Part shown: piece by piece, positions 25,081 to 56,402 of the stretch
Layout: each line of letters begins with the position of its first letter
How positions within the stretch are numbered: the first letter of the stretch is position 1
IMG/VR virus record: IMGVR_UViG_3300034072_000926
Coordinates: 372,001-436,000 of that record
Direction: 5' to 3' (one strand)
DNA length: 64,000 nt
The notes under the pieces: model-generated
Database searches by the model: none
Told to the model about the DNA's origin: nothing
The model's input: the letters and a program-made list of their open reading frames with translations, nothing else
Made by a program: the position numbers and the translations under genes

Positions 25081-26286
25081 TTAAAAGGAAAATGCACAAC
25101 CCAACTGCTCGAGGACTTCTTCGGCTTCATCGAAGTCCATGTCGAACTCGTCGACCAGAAGGAACAACGTGGGTTGCTTGCCCTGCAATTGTGCGCGGAT
25201 CTTGTCCAGCTTGGTCGTCGGAGCAGCTACCTTAGGGGCCGGGGCAACCAAGCTCTTACGGGCTTCTACGATGCGCTGGACAGCTTCATCGCTAACAAAG
25301 GCACCGTGGACGCGCCGCAGGTTGCTGCCCTCCATGAGCAGCATGTCACCCTTGCCTAGGAGGTTCTCTGCACCTTCTTCGCCGATAATCGTCCGGCTGT
25401 CGAAATTGCTTGCAACTCGGAAGCTAATCCGAGTGGGGAGGTTCGCCTTGAGAACACCCGTCACAACGTCCACAGACGGCCGCTGAGTAGCCATAATAAG
25501 ATGGATGCCCGCTGCTCGCGCTTTCTGTGCAATGCGCTGCACAAGCCCTTCAAGGGCTTTGCCGGCCATCGAGATCAGATCAGCAAATTCATCAATGACC
25601 ACAACAATGTAGGGCAGCTTGTTGGCGTGCTTTTCATTGTAGTTCGCAATGTTGCGAACCTTTGCATCGCTGAGCAGTCGGTAACGATCCTCCATGGTCT
25701 GGACAATCTCACCCAGTGCCTCAATGGCTTCCTTGGGATCGGTAATCGTCGGGCGCAGCAAATGCGGGATGCCATCATATATGGACAGTTCCAGCATCTT
25801 CGGATCGATAAAGAGGAACTTGCATTCCTCTGCCGAAAACTTGGAAAGCAGGCTGAGGATCATGCTGTTCACGCCCACGCTCTTGCCCGATCCGGTGGTG
25901 CCCGCGACGAGCAAGTGGGGCATGGTAGCGAGGTCGCTCACGACGGCCTCCCCAGTGATTGCACGACCGAGGATGATGGGCAATGCCGCGTTGCTCTTCT
26001 GGAACTCCGGGGCAACCAAGAGGTCATCGAAGGAGATCATCTGGCGGTTCTCATTGGGAACCTCGACCGACATTGTGTTGCTTCCCTGCGTGGGAAGGAT
26101 ACGAATGCCCTGCACGCCAATGCAGCGCGCAATATCGTTGGTCAGACCGATGACCTTATTGGAACGGACACCGCGCTCCAATTCGATTTCGTAGGTGGAA
26201 ACCAGCGGGCCGCTCTTGACCGAAACGACTTCGACTTTGAAGCCGAAATCTTCGAAAGCTTGTTCCAGTGCAACGGTGCGGTTCAT
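25081..26286 (-). CDS. ftsK: FtsK/SpoIIIE DNA translocase motor domain only
   Basis: PHLLVAGTTGSGKS, IDPKMLEL, VVVIDEFADL, RAAGIHLIMATQRPSVDV, GAENLLGKGDML; no N-terminal TM. Confidence 0.9.
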   Translation of the reverse strand: MNRTVALEQAFEDFGFKVEVVSVKSGPLVSTYEIELERGVRSNKVIGLTNDIARCIGVQGIRILPTQGSNTMSVEVPNENRQMISFDDLLVAPEFQKSNAALPIILGRAITGEAVVSDLATMPHLLVAGTTGSGKSVGVNSMILSLLSKFSAEECKFLFIDPKMLELSIYDGIPHLLRPTITDPKEAIEALGEIVQTMEDRYRLLSDAKVRNIANYNEKHANKLPYIVVVIDEFADLISMAGKALEGLVQRIAQKARAAGIHLIMATQRPSVDVVTGVLKANLPTRISFRVASNFDSRTIIGEEGAENLLGKGDMLLMEGSNLRRVHGAFVSDEAVQRIVEARKSLVAPAPKVAAPTTKLDKIRAQLQGKQPTLFLLVDEFDMDFDEAEEVLEQLGCAFSF

Positions 26287-27855: not shown

Positions 27856-28028
27856 CGGTCGCTCAGTTTCCCGATCGGACTCGTCATACCACAGAGGCGG
27901 AGCCATCCTGCATGATTGCGTCGACGTTCTGCATCCTGGGCTTCCAGCTGCTCGCGCTTTTTCTCTGCCCAGTAGCGATCGTTCTCCGTGAGGTCCAGCC
28001 CACGCCGGCCGTCATTGTGGTAGGTCAT
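27852..28028 (-). CDS. small hypothetical protein
   Basis: ATGA overlaps at both ends. Confidence 0.55.
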   Translation of the reverse strand: MTYHNDGRRGLDLTENDRYWAEKKREQLEAQDAERRRNHAGWLRLCGMTSPIGKLSDR

Positions 28029-29032
28029 TCTGCGGGCCTCCATGCTGGATTGTCCCAACCATCTTTAACACCACTTTGGAGAATGTCAAGATGGACTGCG
28101 GGCGACCGGCCCAGATATTTGTGGGCATTGTAGCGGTGCATCCGCTCCAGATTGTCGCGATATTCGTCATATTGCGCACGATCCTCAGCGGTGCCATAAT
28201 CGGAGACCATGCCGTCCACAAATGCAGCGCACAGGTCGCTCCACTTGGTATGCGTGAAGATCTCCACGAAATCGTAGGGCGCACCGAAGACGACCTCATC
28301 CGTGGTCGCGTCGAACATGTCGCCTGTTGGTGCGCGAGTGAGAACCTCTTCCGGAACCCCGAGGAAACGACCGACCTCGTAGACTTCCGATTTGAACAGG
28401 TCGCTGATCAGCTGGAGATCGACCATGCCGTCAGAAGCTTTGCCGAAATAGCCGAGGTAGCCACCCTCGCTGAGATTGGTCGTGCCGATGACCAGACCGG
28501 GCATTCCCTGTGCTGCGAGAACGCTGGTCACATAATAGTAGACTGGAGTCCGAGCGTAGCTGGTGATCTGACCACGACACCAGTCCGCTTTGTCCTCATT
28601 GGGTGCACCGAGACCGCTGAACAGTTCCACGTCCTGTATGATCTGCTTTGTGATCAGACTCATGTTGATTTCGTAGAACTTAACACCGAACGTCCGGCAG
28701 ACCTGCTCCGCGAGATTAGCTGCGTCGTCCTGTCCCGTTACGCCGTGATTCTCACGATCTGGCAGGGTGATGGCAACAATACGTTCGATCGGACTGTCCT
28801 CTGCCCGGCTGGCCATTTCGACCAGACCCAGGACCACCGCACTGTCGATGCCACCGGAGATCGCAACCACTGCGCTCTTGAGGCCGGCTTGTCGGTAATA
28901 GGCGTTGAGCAGCTTGATCTTTTCCTCGACCACCGTCTCAACATTGAACCCACGTTCCTGTCGGACATGAGCGAGAGCCTGTCGGAGCGGCGCACTGAGG
29001 ACCATGTTGGTCGAGTGGTTGCGGATTTCCAT
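28025..29032 (-). CDS. nadE: NH3-dependent NAD+ synthetase
   Basis: AISGGIDSAV, GTTNLSE, GYFGKASDG, LISDLFKSEV; no glutaminase domain. Confidence 0.88.
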   Translation of the reverse strand: MEIRNHSTNMVLSAPLRQALAHVRQERGFNVETVVEEKIKLLNAYYRQAGLKSAVVAISGGIDSAVVLGLVEMASRAEDSPIERIVAITLPDRENHGVTGQDDAANLAEQVCRTFGVKFYEINMSLITKQIIQDVELFSGLGAPNEDKADWCRGQITSYARTPVYYYVTSVLAAQGMPGLVIGTTNLSEGGYLGYFGKASDGMVDLQLISDLFKSEVYEVGRFLGVPEEVLTRAPTGDMFDATTDEVVFGAPYDFVEIFTHTKWSDLCAAFVDGMVSDYGTAEDRAQYDEYRDNLERMHRYNAHKYLGRSPAVHLDILQSGVKDGWDNPAWRPAE

Positions 29033-45138: not shown

Positions 45139-46107
45139 TCAGATATATCGAAGACTGGATATAACGCTGAGATTCGTGAGCTGCCCGCCAAATACCGAAT
45201 AGGGAATTGCGAGGATACCCTTGTCTAAGAGTTCCTCCCAGCTATAGGGAACAACCTGCAAGTAGGAAACTTGCTGGTCACTGATGTAGAAATTGATCTG
45301 AAAATCTCGATGCAATTCCCGTTGCATATTCAACCGAGACGTGAGTATCTGGGAACCGTATGTCATGCAAGCAAAGCGTTCCTTCCGAAGAAGAAACTCA
45401 GCTTTGCGGAAATTCTCCTTATCATCTTCCCAAGTCAATGCCCGGAAGGTAGGAGTGTAGAGGGAAATGTCCTCACTGGGAACCATGCAGACTCCCATCA
45501 TCTTCTCAGAAATGAAGCTCTTAGAGAGGCTATGGAGGAAGATAGCCTGGCCGGTATCCCAGAGACTTTGGGTCAGCTCGTCCATGTCGAAATAGTTGTA
45601 GACGCCGTCGATGACGATGCGACGCTTCTTGTCATGTGCAAGCCATTGAAAGAGAGTTGCACGTTCGCCCATTGAGAGTGGTTCATTGCGCGGCTTGCTA
45701 GGATGACAGAAGAGCAGGAAGTCACCCTGGGGTATATTGGCCAGTGGGTAACTCCGATATGTCACTGTGAGCTGGAATGGATTCCGCTTTGCAAGTTGCA
45801 TATAGACCGGATAGACATCTTCCGGAATAACCCATAGCTTGGCGAAATTTGATTTCAGGAGAACTTCGAGAGAATGACGAACACCCTGAGAGATCAAGGT
45901 ATTAGGCTTGAGGTCACGGGATAGTTTCATTGCATCGAGCCAGAACTCAGCAAGGTGACAGCGGTATGAAACCTCAGGTAGATCATCGGGATGGAAGTTG
46001 CGCGGCTTGAGCCTGCTATTGCGTAGGCGAGACTCGGACAGATCGAGAATGTCCGGCTGTTCGGCGAGGATCTTCTCTTTTGCTTCGATGAAATTCTGAA
46101 GGTTCAC
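45139..46107 (-). CDS. PLP-dependent aminotransferase-like protein (class I/II)
   Basis: SQGVRHSL, PEDVYPVY, IVIDGVY, LHSLSKS. Confidence 0.7.
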   Translation of the reverse strand: MNLQNFIEAKEKILAEQPDILDLSESRLRNSRLKPRNFHPDDLPEVSYRCHLAEFWLDAMKLSRDLKPNTLISQGVRHSLEVLLKSNFAKLWVIPEDVYPVYMQLAKRNPFQLTVTYRSYPLANIPQGDFLLFCHPSKPRNEPLSMGERATLFQWLAHDKKRRIVIDGVYNYFDMDELTQSLWDTGQAIFLHSLSKSFISEKMMGVCMVPSEDISLYTPTFRALTWEDDKENFRKAEFLLRKERFACMTYGSQILTSRLNMQRELHRDFQINFYISDQQVSYLQVVPYSWEELLDKGILAIPYSVFGGQLTNLSVISSLRYI

Positions 46108-47375
46108 TTGATCGTAATCTCGCTCTTAGGGTCCTCGAGACTGGCGAGGACAGTTCCATCTTGCATGATATTCCAGCTTCGTGCAATGCCATTTTTCCTC
46201 TCCCAGAACATGCTGGGTTCGGTGTAGGCCGCAACACGCATTTTCTTGCCCTTGATTTCACCTTCAAAGAAGGGCGCACCCCAGGGAAGCTGACCTTTCT
46301 CCTCAAACGCAATGTTCTCCATTGCCTCAAGGACTACAGAGAGCGACACTTGATTCGCCTCGCTGTAGAGGTTTTCCTCATTGCCTGCGTAGACACTTTC
46401 GAAGGTGGTCGAAACGTAGAGCTCTTTGAAGCAGACTTCCTGAACACCAAGCTCTGCAGCCCATTCCAAATACTTCTCAACCTCAGCGGCCGAGTTGATT
46501 CCGCTCTTTTGTAGGACGCAGATGAGACGCGACGTGATCTTCGTCTTTTTGACTTGTTCGATCACTTCTTCGGTATTCGTGTCAAGACCCATGATGAATT
46601 GGTTGACCACCGGCTCATAGTGGTGACGCGAAATTGCTAGGACATTCAAGCCATTGGCATCATAGTCTATGACCATATCGGGACGCTTTGCAAGCATTAC
46701 ACCATTTGTAATCAGGACGGTCTTGAACATTGAACTGCCGACTAAGATTGCCTTGCAGATTTCAGGATGACTGGCTAGGGTAGGTTCCCCGCCACCTGTT
46801 ATGACGAACCGAGTTGCACCGCGATGATAGGCAGTTATCATCTTGCGGACGATGGAAGGACTGAACATTGCTTTCGAGTCCTGTTCAACCGAGACCGAAG
46901 CCTCACTGAAACAGAACTTGCATTTGGCCTGACATGCTTGACCGACTGGGAGCCAGCTAATCGAGCGAGGTTCGAGAGACTCGTAGGGTTTGAAGCCACC
47001 CTGGATAGCCATCGACATAGCGTAGATTGTCTCCACGTTATATGTCTCGCCATTCATGTAGATTGTCTCAACAGGGAAGCGATTGCCCTCGATGTAGCGA
47101 CCCAGCCCCGTGCCCGTTACATCATTGGTACGAACATCGTAGCCTTTAAGATCTCCCTGCATGATAATGATCTCATCACCAGGAATGTTGAGCTTCTCGA
47201 GGAGCCGTTCGGCCTTGGCAGTTCCGATGCCGAGTTCGTGATGTCGGAGGACAAATGTCGTTCCAGGATAGGAAGACTCGGGGATGGCAGACTTATCATA
47301 GGCGCGAGCATACTTGTCGTAGGCTTTCGCAAAGTTGCTCAGCAGCGTCACATGATAATAAAAGAACATCAGCAT
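46104..47375 (-). CDS. radical SAM protein with N-terminal extension
   Basis: CQAKCKFC, ITGGGEPTL, LITNG. Confidence 0.88.
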   Translation of the reverse strand: MLMFFYYHVTLLSNFAKAYDKYARAYDKSAIPESSYPGTTFVLRHHELGIGTAKAERLLEKLNIPGDEIIIMQGDLKGYDVRTNDVTGTGLGRYIEGNRFPVETIYMNGETYNVETIYAMSMAIQGGFKPYESLEPRSISWLPVGQACQAKCKFCFSEASVSVEQDSKAMFSPSIVRKMITAYHRGATRFVITGGGEPTLASHPEICKAILVGSSMFKTVLITNGVMLAKRPDMVIDYDANGLNVLAISRHHYEPVVNQFIMGLDTNTEEVIEQVKKTKITSRLICVLQKSGINSAAEVEKYLEWAAELGVQEVCFKELYVSTTFESVYAGNEENLYSEANQVSLSVVLEAMENIAFEEKGQLPWGAPFFEGEIKGKKMRVAAYTEPSMFWERKNGIARSWNIMQDGTVLASLEDPKSEITIK

Positions 47376-48259: not shown

Positions 48260-48628
48260 TTAGGCTTCCGTCTGCTCGGTCTGTGCCGGCGTTTCTTCCT
48301 TCGACGTCACGGACACTTCAGCGCCCTCGACGTTGTTCTCGGCGCCCGCGGCGGTCAGAGCGAACCAGCCATACTTGTCGGGGCGCAGGCCGAAGTTCGA
48401 CGCATCGGCGATCACGCTGTTGGCGCCCATCTTCTCGACCAGCGCGTCGGCGATTTCGACGGACAGGCCCTTGCTCTTGCTGCCCTTCAGTTCCACGAGA
48501 TGCGGCGACGCCTTGCGATCCGTCGGACGAACGAAGAGGACGCCGTCCTTGACCGCGACACGCAGCTTGGCGCCGCTGCGCCCGGAAATTGCCGAAGAAG
48601 CCTGGGTATTGAAATTCAGAACACGCAT
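48260..48628 (-). CDS. 'KYGWF' paralog family protein 2
   Basis: KLRVAVKDGVLFVRPTDR...DKYGWF; GC3-rich codons. Confidence 0.8.
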   Translation of the reverse strand: MRVLNFNTQASSAISGRSGAKLRVAVKDGVLFVRPTDRKASPHLVELKGSKSKGLSVEIADALVEKMGANSVIADASNFGLRPDKYGWFALTAAGAENNVEGAEVSVTSKEETPAQTEQTEA

Positions 48629-48792: not shown

Positions 48793-49140
48793 TTAACGGC
48801 AGCGACGGTCGATTGCGCGTCCTGCCAGAGCACCAGCACCGGCGCCTACGATAGTGCCAGTTGCACGATCGCCTTCGGTATCGATGGAGCGACCCAGCAG
48901 TCCGCCTGCTACTGCGCCGAGAATTGTGCCGGTGGTTCCACCACGGCAACGCTCGCCACGATAGCCATTGCGGTATGGACCACGGCGATCATAACGGTCA
49001 TAACCACGATAAGGACGATAGTCCCTGTAGTGACGGTCATAGCGATAGCCACGATCATGACGACCATGATCCCTTGCCTCAGCGGCAACAGGAGCCAGAA
49101 CCATCAGAGAGGCCATAAGACCAAGAATGAGCTTTTTCAT
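48793..49140 (-). CDS. secreted glycine-zipper 2TM protein
   Basis: signal peptide, R/Y/D-rich linker, GTILGAVAGGLLG...GTIVGAGAGALAGRAIDR. Confidence 0.85.
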   Translation of the reverse strand: MKKLILGLMASLMVLAPVAAEARDHGRHDRGYRYDRHYRDYRPYRGYDRYDRRGPYRNGYRGERCRGGTTGTILGAVAGGLLGRSIDTEGDRATGTIVGAGAGALAGRAIDRRCR

Positions 49141-49197
49141 AGAATTCTCCTTTCCTATATGTATCTAGCACAGATCGGCTTAACCTAACCTGTATAG

Positions 49198-49644
49198 TTA
49201 ATCCTTTTTCTTTTTCTTCTGCTCGTCGAACTGTTTATAGAACAAATAGGAATGCACGCCTGCGTCCATGATGTGCTGCTCAGTCGGCGAAAGGCTAACC
49301 GCGCCGTCCTTGAGTTCTTCGATACAGCTTTTGTCGTAATATGGAAGGGGAAGATCATGGCCACTGTAGATCTTGGGATTGCTTTCAATGTCCTCGAGAT
49401 CGTGGTCGAGGATCACAAAAGCTGTATAGACTTCATCATCGCCTGGATGACATACTGCCATGGCGATCTTGTTATGGCCACTTCGCATTTCGTTCGCGCC
49501 GTCAAGGACTTCGTTGAGAGCGTCCCGAAGAGCTGTTAGGCCCTGTCGTCCGCCAATCACGTAAGCGTTGTGGTGATACTTTTTCTGAGGGAAGATAGCG
49601 AGGATACGATTCTCAGATGCTTCGATGAATTCGTCACGGTCCAT
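49198..49644 (-). CDS. hypothetical protein
   Basis: AAGGTGA SD. Confidence 0.7.
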   Translation of the reverse strand: MDRDEFIEASENRILAIFPQKKYHHNAYVIGGRQGLTALRDALNEVLDGANEMRSGHNKIAMAVCHPGDDEVYTAFVILDHDLEDIESNPKIYSGHDLPLPYYDKSCIEELKDGAVSLSPTEQHIMDAGVHSYLFYKQFDEQKKKKKD

Positions 49645-49695
49645 ATATCACCTTTTAATATTGATTAGCTGTCCTGCTCTATGTATAACAAGGAC

Positions 49696-50012
49696 AGTAG
49701 GAAAGCAAATTGTGAGGACGAAATACCGCACAAAGAATTTTCCCACTAGACTAGCATCCCTGCTCAGTGGGCCCTAAATCGGTATGGGGATACAGACCGA
49801 CGTTGACCTGCCACCGTAAACGCACAGGGGCCTTTCGGGATTGAGCTATATCAATTCTCGGGTGTTGGATATCACCGCCCTATCCAGGTACGCCTACTAT
49901 CCAAGGGGCGAAGTTGGGGAAGAACTTCTAAATAAGTCCTGCGGGGCAATCCGCCGAGGTCAACGTAGCCTCAAGAGCCAGGAAACTTTCTAGTCAACTG
50001 TTTCCTGGCTCG
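49696..50012 (+). ncRNA. candidate large structured ncRNA (~300 nt)
   Basis: TTGATT-N17-TATAAC promoter at 49661-49689; no ORF; 10-bp ACGTTGACCT/AGGTCAACGT closing stem; many hairpins; 12-bp terminal hairpin. Confidence 0.6.
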
Positions 50013-50030
50013 CTTTGCCATAAATACACA

Positions 50031-50124
50031 TGACAGAGACGCCTAATTGGTATGGGCGCTTCCGCACTTCGGGCAGGCGTATCCAGTGGAAGAGTGTAGC
50101 GGGGTTCAAATCCCCGCCCTGTCA
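50031..50124 (+). tRNA. tRNA-like RNA with extended anticodon arm (isotype not assignable)
   Basis: acceptor TGACAGAG/CCCTGTCA, D-arm CGCCT-AATTGGTAT-GGGCG, T-arm CGGGG-TTCAAAT-CCCCG; no encoded CCA. Confidence 0.65.
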
Positions 50125-50125
50125 C

Positions 50126-50317
50126 TTACGAAGCGAAATCAGGATCGATCACGCGAGGATGATCCTTGGCAGACTCGAACCCCATCTGATAGGCCGGCGT
50201 CCCGCTTTTGTAGCGTTCCATCAGCTCAGTGTGACCTTCGCCATAGTAGCGAACTCCATCCTGCTGGCCGGTCTGATACTGGGCCTGATTGGTGTCGAAA
50301 GTCAAGCTCTTATACAT
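50126..50317 (-). CDS. hypothetical protein
   Basis: YQTGQQDG...AYQMGF; AAGGA SD. Confidence 0.65.
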   Translation of the reverse strand: MYKSLTFDTNQAQYQTGQQDGVRYYGEGHTELMERYKSGTPAYQMGFESAKDHPRVIDPDFAS

Positions 50318-50332
50318 GAGACGTCCTTCCCG

Positions 50333-50587
50333 TTATACTAGGCGGCGCACTGGATTACCGTCGCGATCAATACGCTCAATAATGCCATAGCAGAATAATT
50401 GCAACTGATCCCATTCCTCGCTTAGTGCGAGGGCACGGCTATATGCCATTTCAATGAGATCCGGGATCTTAACGAACCGAGGATCCGTCGACGGAAGGCT
50501 GAATTCCTTAACGATCTTGTCCTCGAGAAGAACCGTCACATTATGATCGCGATTGGAATGGCGCGGTACATTCATTCTCTGAAACAT
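50333..50587 (-). CDS. hypothetical protein
   Basis: AAAGGAG SD. Confidence 0.7.
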   Translation of the reverse strand: MFQRMNVPRHSNRDHNVTVLLEDKIVKEFSLPSTDPRFVKIPDLIEMAYSRALALSEEWDQLQLFCYGIIERIDRDGNPVRRLV

Positions 50588-50641
50588 CGTGGCTCCTTTC
50601 TTAACACTTATGACAAATACATAACAGGTGTTAAGAGAGCA

Positions 50642-50953
50642 TTAACGGACAGCGACCTCCTTCACCTCATATTCGATGTCATAGACGTTGTCGTAGCCGA
50701 CCTCTTCGAAATAGCCGCCATCGAGTTTCAGGATCTTCTTTATCCAGTCTATCCAGTTCGTCTGGTTCAGAACCGAGTTCTTCTCGACACTGTCGTAGCG
50801 AGCATCGTAGGCATGTCGTGCTGCCTTGACTTCTTCGTTGGCCGAAAACGCCCAGGACTTTGCGAGCATTTCGTCATCCGTCACAAACGGATACGATAGT
50901 TCTTCACCGCCGCTGTAATCACCATGGTCGAGTTTGCGAATTACGAGGAACAT
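50642..50953 (-). CDS. hypothetical protein
   Basis: after cassette unit 50954-51008. Confidence 0.8.
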   Translation of the reverse strand: MFLVIRKLDHGDYSGGEELSYPFVTDDEMLAKSWAFSANEEVKAARHAYDARYDSVEKNSVLNQTNWIDWIKKILKLDGGYFEEVGYDNVYDIEYEVKEVAVR

Positions 50954-51081: not shown

Positions 51082-51375
51082 TTAAGCGATCTTGACCGAG
51101 GGACCGCGGCCCTGATGACCCGGAATGAGGGCGAACCAGCCATACTTGTCGGCGCGGACGCCGTAGGTGCCGGCGGGCATTTCGACGCCTTCGAGCTCGA
51201 TCTTGGCGCCGTTCAGCGGGACCAGGTGTTCGGCCGACTTGTCCAGGTTCACCGCCGATGCACGATGCGTCGGACGAATGAAGAGGGTTCCATCCTTGAT
51301 ATGAGCGCGGATCTTCTGTGCGCCGACAAAACGATCCTGCCCACGGGCAGCGGTGTTCAGAGTGAGAGTTGCCAT
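51082..51375 (-). CDS. 'KYGWF' paralog family protein 3
   Basis: KIRAHIKDGTLFIRPTHR...DKYGWF; AGGTAGATCGAAC SD. Confidence 0.8.
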   Translation of the reverse strand: MATLTLNTAARGQDRFVGAQKIRAHIKDGTLFIRPTHRASAVNLDKSAEHLVPLNGAKIELEGVEMPAGTYGVRADKYGWFALIPGHQGRGPSVKIA

Positions 51376-51659
51376 GTTCGATCTACCTTTGTTCACTGTT
51401 CGGTTATAGGTTGCGGGATTGCTACCTACTTGTGAACAGCGGAACTTGCCGTTCACAGCCTGAATATATGTGATAGAATTTTATTGTCAACAGCTTTTCG
51501 CACGTTTTCTGCGGTTTTGACTACTCTATAGGGTGTTGTCAAGCGAAAAATCAACGATTACTGCGGTTTTTGCACCTAAAATTTTTCACATTTTTCTTGC
51601 ACCATAGTATAGATGTAGTACGCTATCCAGTGTATTTCAATAGGTTGGAAGCAGGTTAA

Positions 51660-54302: not shown

Positions 54303-56402
54303 TTAGTTGCCGAAGCCGATGCCAGACTTACGATAACCCGGCTTGACCTTCAGTTCGTCCTCAATAAGGTTGAGGATTTCGTTAGGGTCTTCCACGCCCA
54401 GGATCGTGACCTTCTTCATGACCGTCGAGAAGTCACCCGGTGCCAGGTTATCGAAACGCTCAATGCGCGTCGGAGCAGGCAGCTTGAAATACTTCTCAAA
54501 GAGCTTCGCGCTTTGTTCAGGACGCATGAAGTCAAACTTCATCTTGAAGGTGAACCTACGCAGCGAGGCAGGGTCCAGGTTGTCCATCAAGTTGGTCGTG
54601 ATAATGAAGGGCTGGTCGTGATTTTCCATCTGCGACAGCATTTCATTGACCTGGCTGATCTCCCAGCTCTGACGTGCCTTGGTGCGATCCTGAAGGAAGG
54701 AGTCGCCTTCGTCGATGATCAGGACCTTCTTGCCCTCACGCGCTTCCTTGAAAGCCTTCGCGATGTTCTTCTCGCACTCGCCGAGCCACATGCTCTGCAG
54801 GTCCGATGCGCGCTTGTAGAGCACTTGCTTGCCTAGGCGCTTTGCAAGGTAGCGACCATATTCGCTCTTACCCGTGCCAGGAGCACCGTAGAGGCAAAGC
54901 GAGAATGCCGGGTTAGCGGTCATCAGACGCTCAGTGAACTTATTGAGGTCCAAGTCAGTGTTTGCGCAAGACACATCGTAGGGAGTGTCCTTCATCTTCA
55001 CTTCATCGAACTTGCGAGTCTCACCGAAGTTCATCAGTCGGTCGAGGCTAACGATAACTTCAGAGATGTCATCGCCCTCAAGGCCGGCCATGCCGCTGAT
55101 CTTCATGGAGTTGTTGATCAGAGCAGGAACAATGTCAAAGGAGTTGCCGAAGCTTTCCACGAGTTCGTCGGACAGGTTGACGTTATACTTTGCTGCCGCA
55201 CGAGCCCACATTCCCTTGCGAGCTTCCTGAGGAGGAATTTCGAAGTGAATGTTATAGACCATTCGACGCAAGCAAGCCGAACCCATCGCGGTCACGCTGT
55301 TGGTGGTCCAGATGATGGGGATGGTAGTCGTCTCAATAATGCGGTTGATGAACGCCTTGGAGAACGACGCATTGTTGTCGACCTTGAACAAGTCTTCCAT
55401 TTCATCGAAAAGGATGACCGCCTTCGGATCTTTCTTGAACAGCTTCAGTGCCAGCTTGAGCGAGGTCAAACGCTGAGCACGACCCTTTTCAGCATCGTCG
55501 TTTTCCGAGATGTCGCCGACGATGTGGAGGTTCCAGTCGTTCTGCTTCGCCAGTGCAAGAGCCAGTTCGGTCTTACCCGTGCCCGGCAGGCCCCAGAACA
55601 TCACGTTCGTGCCCTTGTTCTTGGTTTCCAAGCTCGTGTTCACGATCCGAACAGTGCGGTCGATTTCCTTTGCGAGGTGCGGATAATTCTCCATTCCGAG
55701 CGTGGATTCCACGTTGCTGGGAAAGAGCTTCTCTTCGAGAGATTCGATGGAGAAGCTAGTGGCGCAGAGCGCTTCCTTGAGTTCCGCATTCACGTAGGGA
55801 AGGCGATTACCTTCGCTCTCAATAAGGACACCCGACTTGAAGAGGAAGCCCTTGACAATCTTCTCCATATCCTGCGAAGGGATACCGAGGAGAATGTTGT
55901 AGCGTTGGACCGGATCCTTCATGTCCATGTGGTGCCCAAACTTGTCGAACACATAATTGTATCCGTAGGGCAGGCTCTGACGCAGTCGAATTGCAAGGTC
56001 GAGAATGACCGCTTCGTGCTCGTTCAAATCCAGCAAGTCAGCTAGTGCAACCGAGTTCTCGAGCAGTTCGAAGGGTTCCAGGACCTCAGGGAAGAGTTCG
56101 GCCATACGAGCAGCAGCAGCCTGCATGTCGTCGATGGTCATATACTTCTTGAAGCTTGCGTAGCTCGCGAATTCTGCCTTCTCGGGCGAGAGCGTTGCCA
56201 TCCACTCGTTCCGACGAGTAGTGATGATCGTCCACCACTGATTCTCGTTCTCAGAACCATCCTCGAGGTTGCCGACATACATGAGATGCCGATCCATCGC
56301 CTGCTCGATAGCCGAGTCCTGATGGGTGTGGGCAGTCCACGCTCGAACGAGGTTGTAGATCATCTTGTTGTAAAAGCGATTATGCATCTGAGGTCCCAAC
56401 AT
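54303..56402 (-). CDS. AAA+ ATPase with two AAA modules
   Basis: GLPGTGKT/ILFDEMED and GAPGTGKS/LIIDEGDS, LDPASLRRF, C-terminal IGF. Confidence 0.88.
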   Translation of the reverse strand: MLGPQMHNRFYNKMIYNLVRAWTAHTHQDSAIEQAMDRHLMYVGNLEDGSENENQWWTIITTRRNEWMATLSPEKAEFASYASFKKYMTIDDMQAAAARMAELFPEVLEPFELLENSVALADLLDLNEHEAVILDLAIRLRQSLPYGYNYVFDKFGHHMDMKDPVQRYNILLGIPSQDMEKIVKGFLFKSGVLIESEGNRLPYVNAELKEALCATSFSIESLEEKLFPSNVESTLGMENYPHLAKEIDRTVRIVNTSLETKNKGTNVMFWGLPGTGKTELALALAKQNDWNLHIVGDISENDDAEKGRAQRLTSLKLALKLFKKDPKAVILFDEMEDLFKVDNNASFSKAFINRIIETTTIPIIWTTNSVTAMGSACLRRMVYNIHFEIPPQEARKGMWARAAAKYNVNLSDELVESFGNSFDIVPALINNSMKISGMAGLEGDDISEVIVSLDRLMNFGETRKFDEVKMKDTPYDVSCANTDLDLNKFTERLMTANPAFSLCLYGAPGTGKSEYGRYLAKRLGKQVLYKRASDLQSMWLGECEKNIAKAFKEAREGKKVLIIDEGDSFLQDRTKARQSWEISQVNEMLSQMENHDQPFIITTNLMDNLDPASLRRFTFKMKFDFMRPEQSAKLFEKYFKLPAPTRIERFDNLAPGDFSTVMKKVTILGVEDPNEILNLIEDELKVKPGYRKSGIGFGN

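What the first reader, a model, noticed from the sequence alone, without database searches (positions are those of the whole stretch)
49661..50012. Large (~300 nt) multi-branched ncRNA candidate upstream of a tRNA-like gene
Seen on plus: near-consensus TTGATT-N17-TATAAC promoter and no ORF. 5' hairpins are TTGTG/CACAA, CCCACT/AGTGGG (inner AGCA/TGCT) and TCGGT/ACCGA. A 10-bp helix, 49800-49809 with 49957-49966, encloses CGGGATTGA/TCAATTCTCG, GGTG/CACC, CGCCT/GGGCG, GAAGTT/AACTTC and GCGGG-GCAA-TCCGC (GNRA loop). A 12-bp hairpin closes it at 49975-50011. G-U pairs favour the + strand. It lacks RNase P, tmRNA-tag and group I core signatures. Large phage RNAs next to tRNA genes are a known theme (e.g. 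GOLLD), so this may be a new class.
Basis: partly seen in the sequence, partly recalled or inferred. Interest (0 to 1): 0.76.

Follow-up and report, generated by a model that had tools for sequence, protein, structure and literature searches.

The report
Pseudoknot-rich phage RNA plus anticodon-less tRNA mimic
A group of giant bacteriophages (about 280-465 kb) carries a conserved, roughly 320-base non-coding RNA built from a chain of pseudoknots, followed by a tRNA look-alike with no anticodon; neither matches any catalogued RNA family and their function is unknown.

Summary
The candidate is real. The 480-nt gap between two minus-strand ORFs lies in a 465-kb phage record. It holds two plus-strand RNA genes, conserved in eight lineages of related huge phages (seven compared, 55-76% identity).

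**Gene 1 (~49696-50011)**
- It starts at a conserved sigma-70-type promoter.
- It folds as P1, P2, PK1, P4, P5, PK3, P6, PK4, a GNRA hairpin (P7), P8 and a 12-15-bp hairpin (P9).
- Three H-type pseudoknots (PK1, PK3, PK4) are backed by compensatory changes. A fourth, at P4, is uncertain.

**Gene 2 (50032-50124)**
- It is a cloverleaf with covarying acceptor and T stems and an invariant D arm.
- A 7-bp stem closes a ~20-nt loop with an invariant 15-nt motif where the anticodon loop should be.
- In seven of eight lineages it has its own phage-type TAAATA promoter.

Nothing in Rfam 15 matches in any lineage. It is not tmRNA, RNase P RNA, GOLLD or ROOL.

Function is inferred only. The two most likely act as stable trans-acting RNAs, a tRNA-machinery mimic plus a compact pseudoknot scaffold. 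I rate it a new RNA family of a known general kind.

The parts
49661..49689 (+). Sigma-70-type promoter of the pseudoknot RNA: -35 TTGATT (49661-49666), 17-nt spacer, -10 TATAAC (49684-49689). The inferred start is near 49696.
   Evidence: AATATTGA plus a -10 of TATAAC, TATAAA or TATAGT at 17-nt spacing is kept in all eight lineages, while the spacer varies. The consensus scanner skipped it because it requires T as the last base of the -10. The start site itself is inferred.
49698..49745 (+). P1, a variable 5' hairpin.
   Evidence: A hairpin of varying length and sequence sits here in every lineage. It is capped by GCAA in L042, L043 and L059.
49749..49754 (+). Invariant GACUAG, complementary to the P9 loop. 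Its last three bases also form the base of P2.
   Evidence: It is invariant in eight lineages. The pairing with the P9 loop is inferred, with no covariation possible beyond G-C versus G-U at one position.
49753..49764 (+). P2 hairpin, AGCA/UGCU with a CCC-containing loop.
   Evidence: Compensatory versions are AGUG/CACU, UAGC/GCUA, UAGCU/AGCUG and UAGUA/UACUA.
49772..49800 (+). PK1, an H-type pseudoknot. Stem 1 is CCCUA (49772-76) with UGGGG (49785-89). Stem 2 is UCGGU (49779-83) with ACCGA (49796-800).
   Evidence: Stem 2 has six different complementary versions in seven lineages, and a further version in L059. An unbiased search for the best pseudoknot recovers it in every lineage.
49801..49838 (+). 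Linker CGUUG plus P4 hairpin, CCUG (49807-10) with CAGG (49825-28). The P4 loop may form a fourth pseudoknot.
   Evidence: P4 covaries (CCAG/CUGG, CUGGC/GCCAG, GGCAU/GUGCC). A second stem is clear only in G001, G003 and L044, and two registers compete.
49839..49856 (+). P5 hairpin, GAUUGA/UCAAUU.
   Evidence: It is present with other sequences in L042, L043 and L044 (GAAG/CUUC, GGAGU/GACUC, GGAGG/CCUCC) and absent in G003.
49861..49886 (+). PK3, an H-type pseudoknot. Stem 1 is GGUG (49861-64) with CACC (49873-76). Stem 2 is UGGAUA (49866-71) with UAUCCA (49881-86).
   Evidence: Stem 2 differs in all seven lineages and stays complementary. Stem 1 is replaced by GCGAU/AUUGC, GCGGC/GCCGC, UGAG/CUCA and AGGA/UCCU.
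49891..49910 (+). P6 hairpin, CGCCU/GGGCG.
   Evidence: There are wobble changes in the close lineages and full replacements (GAGAC/GUCUC, UCUUG/CAAGA) in distant ones.
49910..49941 (+). PK4, an H-type pseudoknot with an A-rich third loop. Stem 1 is GAAG (49910-13) with CUUC (49925-28). Stem 2 is UGGGG (49915-19) with UCCUG (49937-41).
   Evidence: Stem 2 has six distinct complementary versions, up to 7 bp. In G003 and L044, 0 of 200 shuffles reached the observed score.
49941..49954 (+). P7, a 5-bp hairpin with a GNRA tetraloop (GCAA here).
   Evidence: It is 100% paired, with two pairs changed on both sides. The loop is GCAA, GAAA, GUGA or GUAA.
49956..49972 (+). P8 hairpin, GAGGU/GCCUC, with a 7-nt loop of consensus CAnCGnA.
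Evidence: It is 100% paired, with two pairs changed on both sides.
49975..50011 (+). P9, a 12-bp terminal hairpin (12-15 bp elsewhere). Its apical loop carries the invariant YUAGUC (CUAGUC at 49990-49995).
   Evidence: Ten of 12 pairs have changes on both sides and 97.6% of cells are paired. The loop motif is invariant in eight lineages. No U-run follows it consistently, so it is at best a weak terminator.
50021..50026 (+). TAAATA, the phage-type promoter element of the tRNA mimic. It ends 5 nt upstream of the mimic's first base.
   Evidence: It is present in seven of eight lineages. In G001 it stays with the mimic, downstream of the 185-nt insertion. Genome-wide, 75 of 126 copies lie in the 14% of the DNA that is intergenic, mostly 0-40 nt upstream of same-strand ORF starts.
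50032..50124 (+). An anticodon-less tRNA mimic. Its parts:
- a 7-bp acceptor stem with an invariant A6-C67 mismatch
- an invariant D arm with the GG elbow bases
- a 7-bp stem (50059-65 with 50086-92) closing a 20-nt loop that holds the invariant motif at 50071-50085
- a T arm (50100-50116)
- discriminator A, with no encoded CCA
   Evidence: On the alignment, 95% of cells are paired and nine pairs change on both sides; 0/500 shuffles reach the observed covariation score or percentage paired, and 2/500 reach that pair count. ARAGORN finds nothing. Rfam gives only 18-22 bits to the tRNA-Sec and mascRNA models. There is one copy per genome.

Best explanation
The gap holds two adjacent plus-strand genes for stable non-coding RNAs. 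They belong to one clade of huge phages.

**RNA 1 (about 320 nt)**
- Host RNA polymerase makes it from a conserved sigma-70-type promoter.
- It folds into a chain of small H-type pseudoknots (PK1, PK3, PK4 and perhaps one at P4) interleaved with hairpins.
- It ends in a GNRA hairpin, a short hairpin and a long hairpin.
- The long hairpin's invariant loop (YUAGUC) is complementary to an invariant GACUAG near the 5' end. That pairing would close the chain on itself or join molecules head to tail.

**RNA 2 (93 nt)**
- It keeps what tRNA-handling enzymes read: the acceptor stem, the D/T elbow and a discriminator base.
- In place of an anticodon loop it has a long stem that presents an invariant 15-nt loop motif.
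- It is transcribed from its own phage-type TAAATA promoter.
- Read-through from RNA 1 also reaches it. In that case RNase P cleavage at its 5' end would set the 3' end of RNA 1.

**Proposed mechanism (inferred, not shown)**
- Both act in trans as structured RNAs.
- The mimic engages tRNA-binding machinery or a tRNA-directed host factor without entering decoding.
- The pseudoknot RNA serves as a compact, nuclease-resistant scaffold or decoy.
For: **Shown**
- Eight lineages carry the whole unit (window, L002, G001, G003, L042, L043, L044, L059). Seven were compared and share 55-76% identity.
- The promoter is conserved and faces plus.
- On P7-P9, 98.7% of cells pair and 14 of 22 pairs change on both sides. 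Slid controls give 31-53%.
- On the cloverleaf, 95% of cells pair and nine pairs change on both sides.
- PK1, PK3 and PK4 are recovered by an unbiased search in every lineage, with different complementary sequences.
- No ORF is conserved.
- Invariant G-U pairs would be A-C mismatches on the minus strand.
- There is a single copy per genome.
- TAAATA behaves as a genome-wide promoter motif and travels with the mimic in G001.
- In L044 only 8 nt separate the two RNAs and there is no TAAATA, so they must be co-transcribed there.

**Suggestive**
- In two RNA-type libraries, nearly all index words held from the 2.4-kb neighbourhood fall in the 436-nt RNA segment. X15 holds 0.12 of 263 words against 0.63 of 43; X19 holds 0.09 against 0.56.
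Against: - No experiment or stranded read shows either transcript, its ends or its abundance. The one read-laying run gave low, flat, strandless contig depth over genes and RNA alike.
- The trans-acting decoy or scaffold role is inference from anatomy only.
- No partner protein is identified.
- The loop motif has no complementary target in the phage genome and no conserved pairing with RNA 1.
- The GACUAG-YUAGUC contact cannot be tested by covariation, and it overlaps the base of P2.
- Adjacency of the two RNAs could reflect conserved gene order in one phage clade rather than a functional link. In G001 a reverse-oriented 58-aa ORF sits between them.
Confidence: 0.6

Rival explanations
1. An RNA-only assembly. 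GACUAG of one molecule pairs with the YUAGUC loop of the next. The pseudoknot RNA would then form rings or cages, as phi29 pRNA, ROOL and GOLLD do, possibly with the tRNA mimic as cargo or partner.
For: - Two invariant, mutually complementary 6-mers lie at opposite ends of the RNA. One sits in a 9-13-nt apical loop on a long stem.
- There are two GNRA loops, in P1 of some lineages and in P7.
- ROOL and GOLLD are pseudoknotted phage RNAs near tRNA islands that assemble through kissing loops (bioRxiv 10.1101/2024.12.08.627333).
Against: - The same complementarity can be satisfied within one molecule.
- UAG of GACUAG is also needed for the covarying P2.
- The RNA is much smaller than ROOL or GOLLD, and there is no Rfam match.
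- Nothing here tests oligomerisation.
Confidence: 0.15
2. A rewired relative of tmRNA. The tRNA-like domain plus a ring of pseudoknots would work together on the ribosome, for example by occupying stalled or host ribosomes, but without a tag reading frame.
For: - The parts list matches: a tRNA-like domain plus three or four tandem H-type pseudoknots.
- The phage has 58 tRNAs but no detectable tmRNA.
Against: - The tRNA-like domain is a contiguous cloverleaf, not formed by the RNA's two ends.
- There is no G3-U70 pair.
- The first four acceptor pairs vary between lineages.
- There is no conserved ORF or resume/stop arrangement.
- The phage has no SmpB.
- The Rfam tmRNA model does not touch the locus.
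- The two parts usually have separate promoters and are split by a gene in G001.
Confidence: 0.08
3. A decoy for tRNA-directed host defence. The mimic would soak up a host anticodon nuclease or another tRNA-targeting immune effector. The pseudoknot RNA would be an unrelated neighbour.
For: - tRNA shape is retained under strong selection while decoding capacity is lost.
- The mimic has its own phage promoter.
- From general knowledge, phage tRNA genes are known to counter host tRNA-cleaving defences.
Against: - Known anticodon nucleases read the anticodon loop, which is absent here.
- The invariant 15-nt loop resembles no tRNA anticodon loop.
- The host is unknown.
Confidence: 0.1
4. Minus-strand reading. 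The region would be a structured intercistronic spacer or 5' leader of the 148-aa ORF (49198-49644), or a decayed tRNA gene plus chance hairpins.
For: - Both flanking ORFs are on the minus strand.
- The minus strand folds almost as well in a single-sequence test, z = -2.8.
Against: - The conserved promoter and the T-loop/D-loop polarity face plus.
- Invariant and lineage-specific G-U pairs become A-C on minus.
- The 148-aa gene is absent next to the RNA in G003, L043 and L044.
- Covariation and invariant loops rule out decay.
Confidence: 0.03

Closest known systems
ROOL and GOLLD RNAs (Rfam families; large ornate phage/prophage RNAs)
   Same: They are phage-encoded, of unknown function, richly structured with pseudoknots and GNRA-type contacts, and found beside tRNA-type genes. 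Complementary loops could act as kissing contacts.
   Different: There is no sequence or structure match to either model, even at E up to 10. This RNA is about 320 nt, against about 580 and 800 nt. Its architecture is a linear run of small H-type pseudoknots. Oligomerisation is untested.
tmRNA
   Same: It combines a tRNA-like domain with several consecutive H-type pseudoknots.
   Different: - The cloverleaf is contiguous and lies 3' of the pseudoknots.
- There is no tag ORF, no G3-U70 and no SmpB.
- The Rfam tmRNA model does not match.
- The two parts have separate promoters.
MALAT1/MEN-beta mascRNA-type tRNA-like elements, and phage T4 stable RNAs C and D (both from my own knowledge)
   Same: These are tRNA-shaped RNAs without a working anticodon loop, sitting at or next to another non-coding RNA, where RNase P cleavage can define ends. 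The best weak Rfam hit of the mimic is the mascRNA model, at 22 bits against a 42.5-bit threshold.
   Different: The hit is below the family threshold. This is a bacterial virus. The mimic has a 7-bp stem with a 20-nt invariant-motif loop and, in most lineages, its own promoter. RNase P cleavage is untested.
Plant-virus 3' tRNA-like structures with an upstream pseudoknot domain (TMV, TYMV; own knowledge)
   Same: The order of elements is the same: tandem pseudoknots followed by a tRNA-like structure.
   Different: Those are 3' ends of RNA genomes, are aminoacylated, and build their acceptor arm from a pseudoknot. Here a DNA phage encodes two genes and the mimic is an ordinary cloverleaf.

Membership tests
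Any Rfam 15 family (including GOLLD, ROOL, RNase P RNA, group I intron, 6S, SRP) | A covariance-model match at the family's gathering score | tested here: not met
   There were 0 matches in the 64-kb window and in six related loci. At E up to 10 on the RNA alone, the only match was a 12-bit chance hit to the hairpin ribozyme on the minus strand.
tmRNA | A tRNA-like domain formed by pairing of the RNA's 5' and 3' ends, enclosing the pseudoknots | tested here: not met
   Both acceptor strands lie within 93 nt downstream of the pseudoknot RNA. Covariation supports this local acceptor stem.
tmRNA | A tag reading frame with a resume codon and a stop | tested here: not met
   No ORF or peptide is conserved in any frame across lineages.
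tmRNA | G3-U70 alanine identity and an SmpB partner | tested here: not met
   Pair 3-70 is C-G, U-A or A-U. SmpB is not found in the phage; the best hit scores 13.9 bits inside a 1004-aa frame. Host SmpB cannot be excluded.
tmRNA | Several H-type pseudoknots | tested here: met
   PK1, PK3 and PK4 are present in all lineages.
tRNA | An acceptor stem, a D arm with GG, and a T arm with a TPsiC-type loop | tested here: met
   All three are covarying or invariant.
tRNA | A 5-bp anticodon stem with a 7-nt anticodon loop | tested here: not met
   There is a 7-bp stem closing a 19-22-nt loop. ARAGORN calls nothing. The tRNA-clan score is 18.5 bits against a 47-bit threshold.
tRNA-like 3' processing element (mascRNA type) | RNase P cleavage at its 5' end releases the upstream RNA | not testable with these tools
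   The geometry allows it (an 8-21-nt linker, apart from G001's 185-nt insertion, and obligatory co-transcription in L044). No end-mapping data could be obtained.
Homo-oligomeric ornate RNAs (ROOL/GOLLD/pRNA type) | Conserved intermolecular loop-loop pairing that gives a defined multimer | not testable with these tools
   Invariant complementary 6-mers exist. Pairing in cis and in trans cannot be told apart by sequence.
Intrinsic terminator (for P9) | A GC-rich hairpin followed by a U-run | tested here: not met
   The scanner finds none in 49000-50800. What follows P9 varies: GCUUUG, GCUAGG, AAUUUA, AUCUUC, and only G001 has UUUU.

The most novel reading that the evidence does not exclude
The two RNAs form one new functional system specific to huge phages. 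An anticodon-less tRNA mimic works with a self-closing or self-assembling chain of pseudoknots. Together they capture or redirect host tRNA-handling or translation machinery, or form an RNA-only particle. This principle would be related to, but evolved independently of, tmRNA and of the ROOL/GOLLD cages.
Probability: 0.25. Interest if true: 0.85.

Novelty: new variant of a known kind. Interest (0 to 1): 0.68.

Why it matters
Large structured RNAs of unknown function are rare, and they have repeatedly led to new biochemistry: ribozymes, riboswitches and RNA cages.

- This is a compact, well-defined family of about 320 nt with three to four pseudoknots and two GNRA loops.
- It has enough natural variation to fix most of its secondary structure.
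- It is small enough for chemical probing and cryo-EM.
- The adjacent tRNA mimic is under strong selection yet cannot decode. That makes testable the question of what huge phages do with tRNA-shaped RNAs beyond codon supply.
- The phage's two promoter types, one on each gene, also give a handle on timing of expression.

Tried and rejected
**Known families and coding**
- Rfam at gathering and at permissive thresholds, on the window, on the RNA alone and on six related loci, gave nothing.
- ARAGORN found no tRNA or tmRNA in the window. It found 58 tRNAs but no tmRNA in the genome.
- tmRNA and SmpB searches of the genome were negative at this locus.
- A conserved ORF or tag peptide was rejected.

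**Searches for relatives**
- BLAST of the locus and of the 148-aa neighbour against deposited phages found no match.
- Two of the DNA-pattern scans added no new lineage. Seven of the eight hits were chance matches, as nhmmer showed.
- Both genome-contig scans found nothing, so there is no bacterial or prophage copy among the species representatives.
- G002 (a 499-kb relative) and L009 lack the RNA. The 92-nt model hit in G002 is an ordinary but long tRNA-Ile.

**Pairing ideas**
- Pairing of the mimic's invariant loop with RNA 1 has no consistent site. Pairing with phage transcripts has no target.
- Pairing of RNA 1's 5' end with the acceptor 3' strand occurs in the window's and G001's sequences only and does not covary.
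- A fourth pseudoknot at P4 is left open.

**Context and transcription**
- The 148-aa neighbour as an obligate partner was rejected, because it is absent in three lineages.
- Read laying gave no information on strand or transcript ends.

Full report
**Setting.** The window is bases 372001-436000 of a 465,259-bp virus record. The genome carries 58 tRNA genes, none of them in the window, and no tmRNA. The finding lies in a 480-nt gap between two minus-strand ORFs, 49198-49644 (148 aa) and 50126-50317 (63 aa). Neither ORF belongs to a known family.

**Observation.** As a single sequence, the 326-nt stretch folds moderately better than shuffles: z = -3.1 on plus and -2.8 on minus. That is not decisive. 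Rfam 15 gives nothing at gathering score in the whole window. At E up to 10 it gives only weak tRNA-like hits at 50032-50123: mascRNA at 22 bits and tRNA-Sec at 18.5 bits.

**Relatives.**
- Deposited phages hold no match.
- Homologs of the 148-aa protein led to contigs 99% and 76% identical over the gap.
- A conserved AAA ATPase led to a 462-kb relative, G001, which has the RNA, and to a 499-kb relative, G002, which lacks it.
- DNA patterns taken from the tRNA-like D arm and from the P7-P8 block found G003 (436 kb), three JGI metagenome contigs (L042, L043, L044) and L059 (277 kb).
- That makes eight lineages. The seven compared share 55-76% identity. Each has one copy.
- Two scans of one genome per bacterial species found none.

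**RNA 1.**
- A promoter of the form AATATTGA, a 17-nt spacer and TATAAC (or TATAAA, TATAGT) is kept in all lineages and faces plus.
- No reading frame survives the 1- and 2-nt indels.
- Comparison gives this plan: P1 (variable), invariant GACUAG, P2, PK1, linker, P4, P5 (absent in G003), PK3, P6, PK4 with an A-rich third loop, P7 with a GNRA tetraloop, P8, and P9.
- On the MAFFT alignment of the 3' domain, P7-P9 are 98.7% paired. Fourteen of 22 pairs change on both sides. No shuffle out of 500 reaches the observed covariation score or paired percentage, and slid controls give 31-53%.
- The pseudoknots do not align column by column, so I tested them in two ways. First, a table of strands per lineage was checked by script for complementarity. 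Second, an unbiased search for the best H-type pseudoknot was run in each homologous segment against 200 shuffles. It recovers the same topology at the same place in all seven lineages, with different stem sequences.
- As an example, stem 2 of PK1 reads UCGGU/ACCGA, UUCAAU/AUUGAA, CUACC/GGUAG, CCGU/ACGG, CCACC/GGUGG and CUGU/ACAG. L059 adds CUUCC/GGAAG.
- A fourth pseudoknot at P4 is clear in only three lineages, and two registers compete.
It is broken in L002 and absent elsewhere, and it overlaps the covarying P8.
- The P9 loop motif YUAGUC and the 5' GACUAG are invariant and complementary. They suggest a closing or intermolecular contact that cannot be tested by covariation.

**RNA 2.**
- RNAalifold and explicit pair counts give a cloverleaf.
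- The acceptor stem is 7 bp. Three pairs covary, and there is an invariant A6-C67 mismatch.
- The D arm is invariant, with 6 bp and the GG elbow bases.
- The T arm covaries.
- A 7-bp stem with four covarying pairs closes a 19-22-nt loop. That loop carries an invariant 15-nt motif (50071-50085).
- There is no 7-nt anticodon loop, which explains why ARAGORN is silent.
- The first four acceptor pairs vary between lineages, and CCA is not encoded except by chance in G003.
- The loop motif has no complementary site in the phage genome and no conserved partner in RNA 1.

**Are they one transcript or two?**
- TAAATA ends 5 nt upstream of the mimic in seven of eight lineages.
- In G001, a 185-nt insertion with a reverse-oriented 58-aa ORF separates the two RNAs, and TAAATA stays with the mimic.
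- Genome-wide, 75 of 126 TAAATA copies lie in the 14% of the DNA that is intergenic. Of those 75, 47 lie 0-40 nt upstream of a same-strand ORF start, with no -35 consensus. TAAATA is therefore a phage-type promoter element.
- RNA 1 has a host-type promoter and the mimic a phage-type one.
- P9 is not a canonical terminator, and L044 has only an 8-nt linker without TAAATA. Read-through followed by RNase P processing is therefore also likely. This step is inferred.

**Transcription evidence.**
- Contigs from four wastewater metatranscriptomes cover the genes and the RNA at similar low depth, without strand information.
- Index shares are more telling. X15 holds 0.12 of 263 words from the 2.4-kb neighbourhood but 0.63 of 43 words from the RNA segment alone. 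X19 holds 0.09 against 0.56.
- Almost everything those libraries hold therefore lies in the RNA segment. This is suggestive, not proof.

**Comparison with known systems.**
- It is not a member of any Rfam family.
- It shares a parts list with tmRNA but fails the defining features of tmRNA.
- It fits the theme of ROOL and GOLLD, which are pseudoknotted phage RNAs near tRNA islands that assemble through kissing loops. It is unrelated to them in sequence, size and plan.
- The mimic resembles mascRNA-type elements in principle only.

**Verdict.** This is a real, conserved and previously uncatalogued pair of phage non-coding RNAs. The structure is largely solved by comparison. The function is inferred.

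Noticed in passing
whole genome (G000); in the window at 50021-50026: TAAATA is a phage-specific promoter-like motif with no -35 partner. It is fourfold enriched in intergenic DNA and usually lies 20-40 nt upstream of ORF starts on both strands, which recalls the T4 late promoter TATAAATA.
   Followed up: partly
G000:C1:222209-222282 and 441571-441647 (outside the window): ARAGORN calls two tRNAs with a CUA anticodon (amber suppressors). This hints at stop-codon reassignment or regulated read-through in this phage. The other tRNAs cluster at both ends of the record.
   Followed up: no
window 48260-48628 (-) and 51082-51456 (-): Two paralogous small proteins (37% identical; four copies in the genome) flank the RNA locus on both sides, here and in L002 and G003. 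ESM Atlas leads point to the AbrB/MazE/MraZ/SymE swapped-hairpin fold at TM about 0.5. They could be regulators or RNA-binding partners.
   Followed up: partly
L017:1817-1993 (G001): A 185-nt insertion carrying a reverse-oriented 58-aa ORF sits between the pseudoknot RNA and the tRNA mimic in one lineage only.
   Followed up: partly
window 50042-50056: The invariant D arm of the mimic contains CCUAA and UAUGG, the two halves of the classic 11-nt GAAA-tetraloop receptor. RNA 1 carries GNRA loops. The Watson-Crick register of the D stem argues for coincidence.
   Followed up: no
L048:1498-1592 (G002): The more distant 499-kb relative lacks the RNA pair. It has an unusually long (95-nt) tRNA-Ile(UAU) call that may hold an insertion.
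   Followed up: no
window 25081-26286, 28025-29032, 46104-47375, 48793-49140, 54303-56402: Neighbouring genes with family matches are an FtsK/SpoIIIE-like ATPase, an NAD synthetase-like protein, a radical SAM protein, a glycine-zipper membrane protein and a double AAA ATPase. Most other ORFs have no family.
   Followed up: partly
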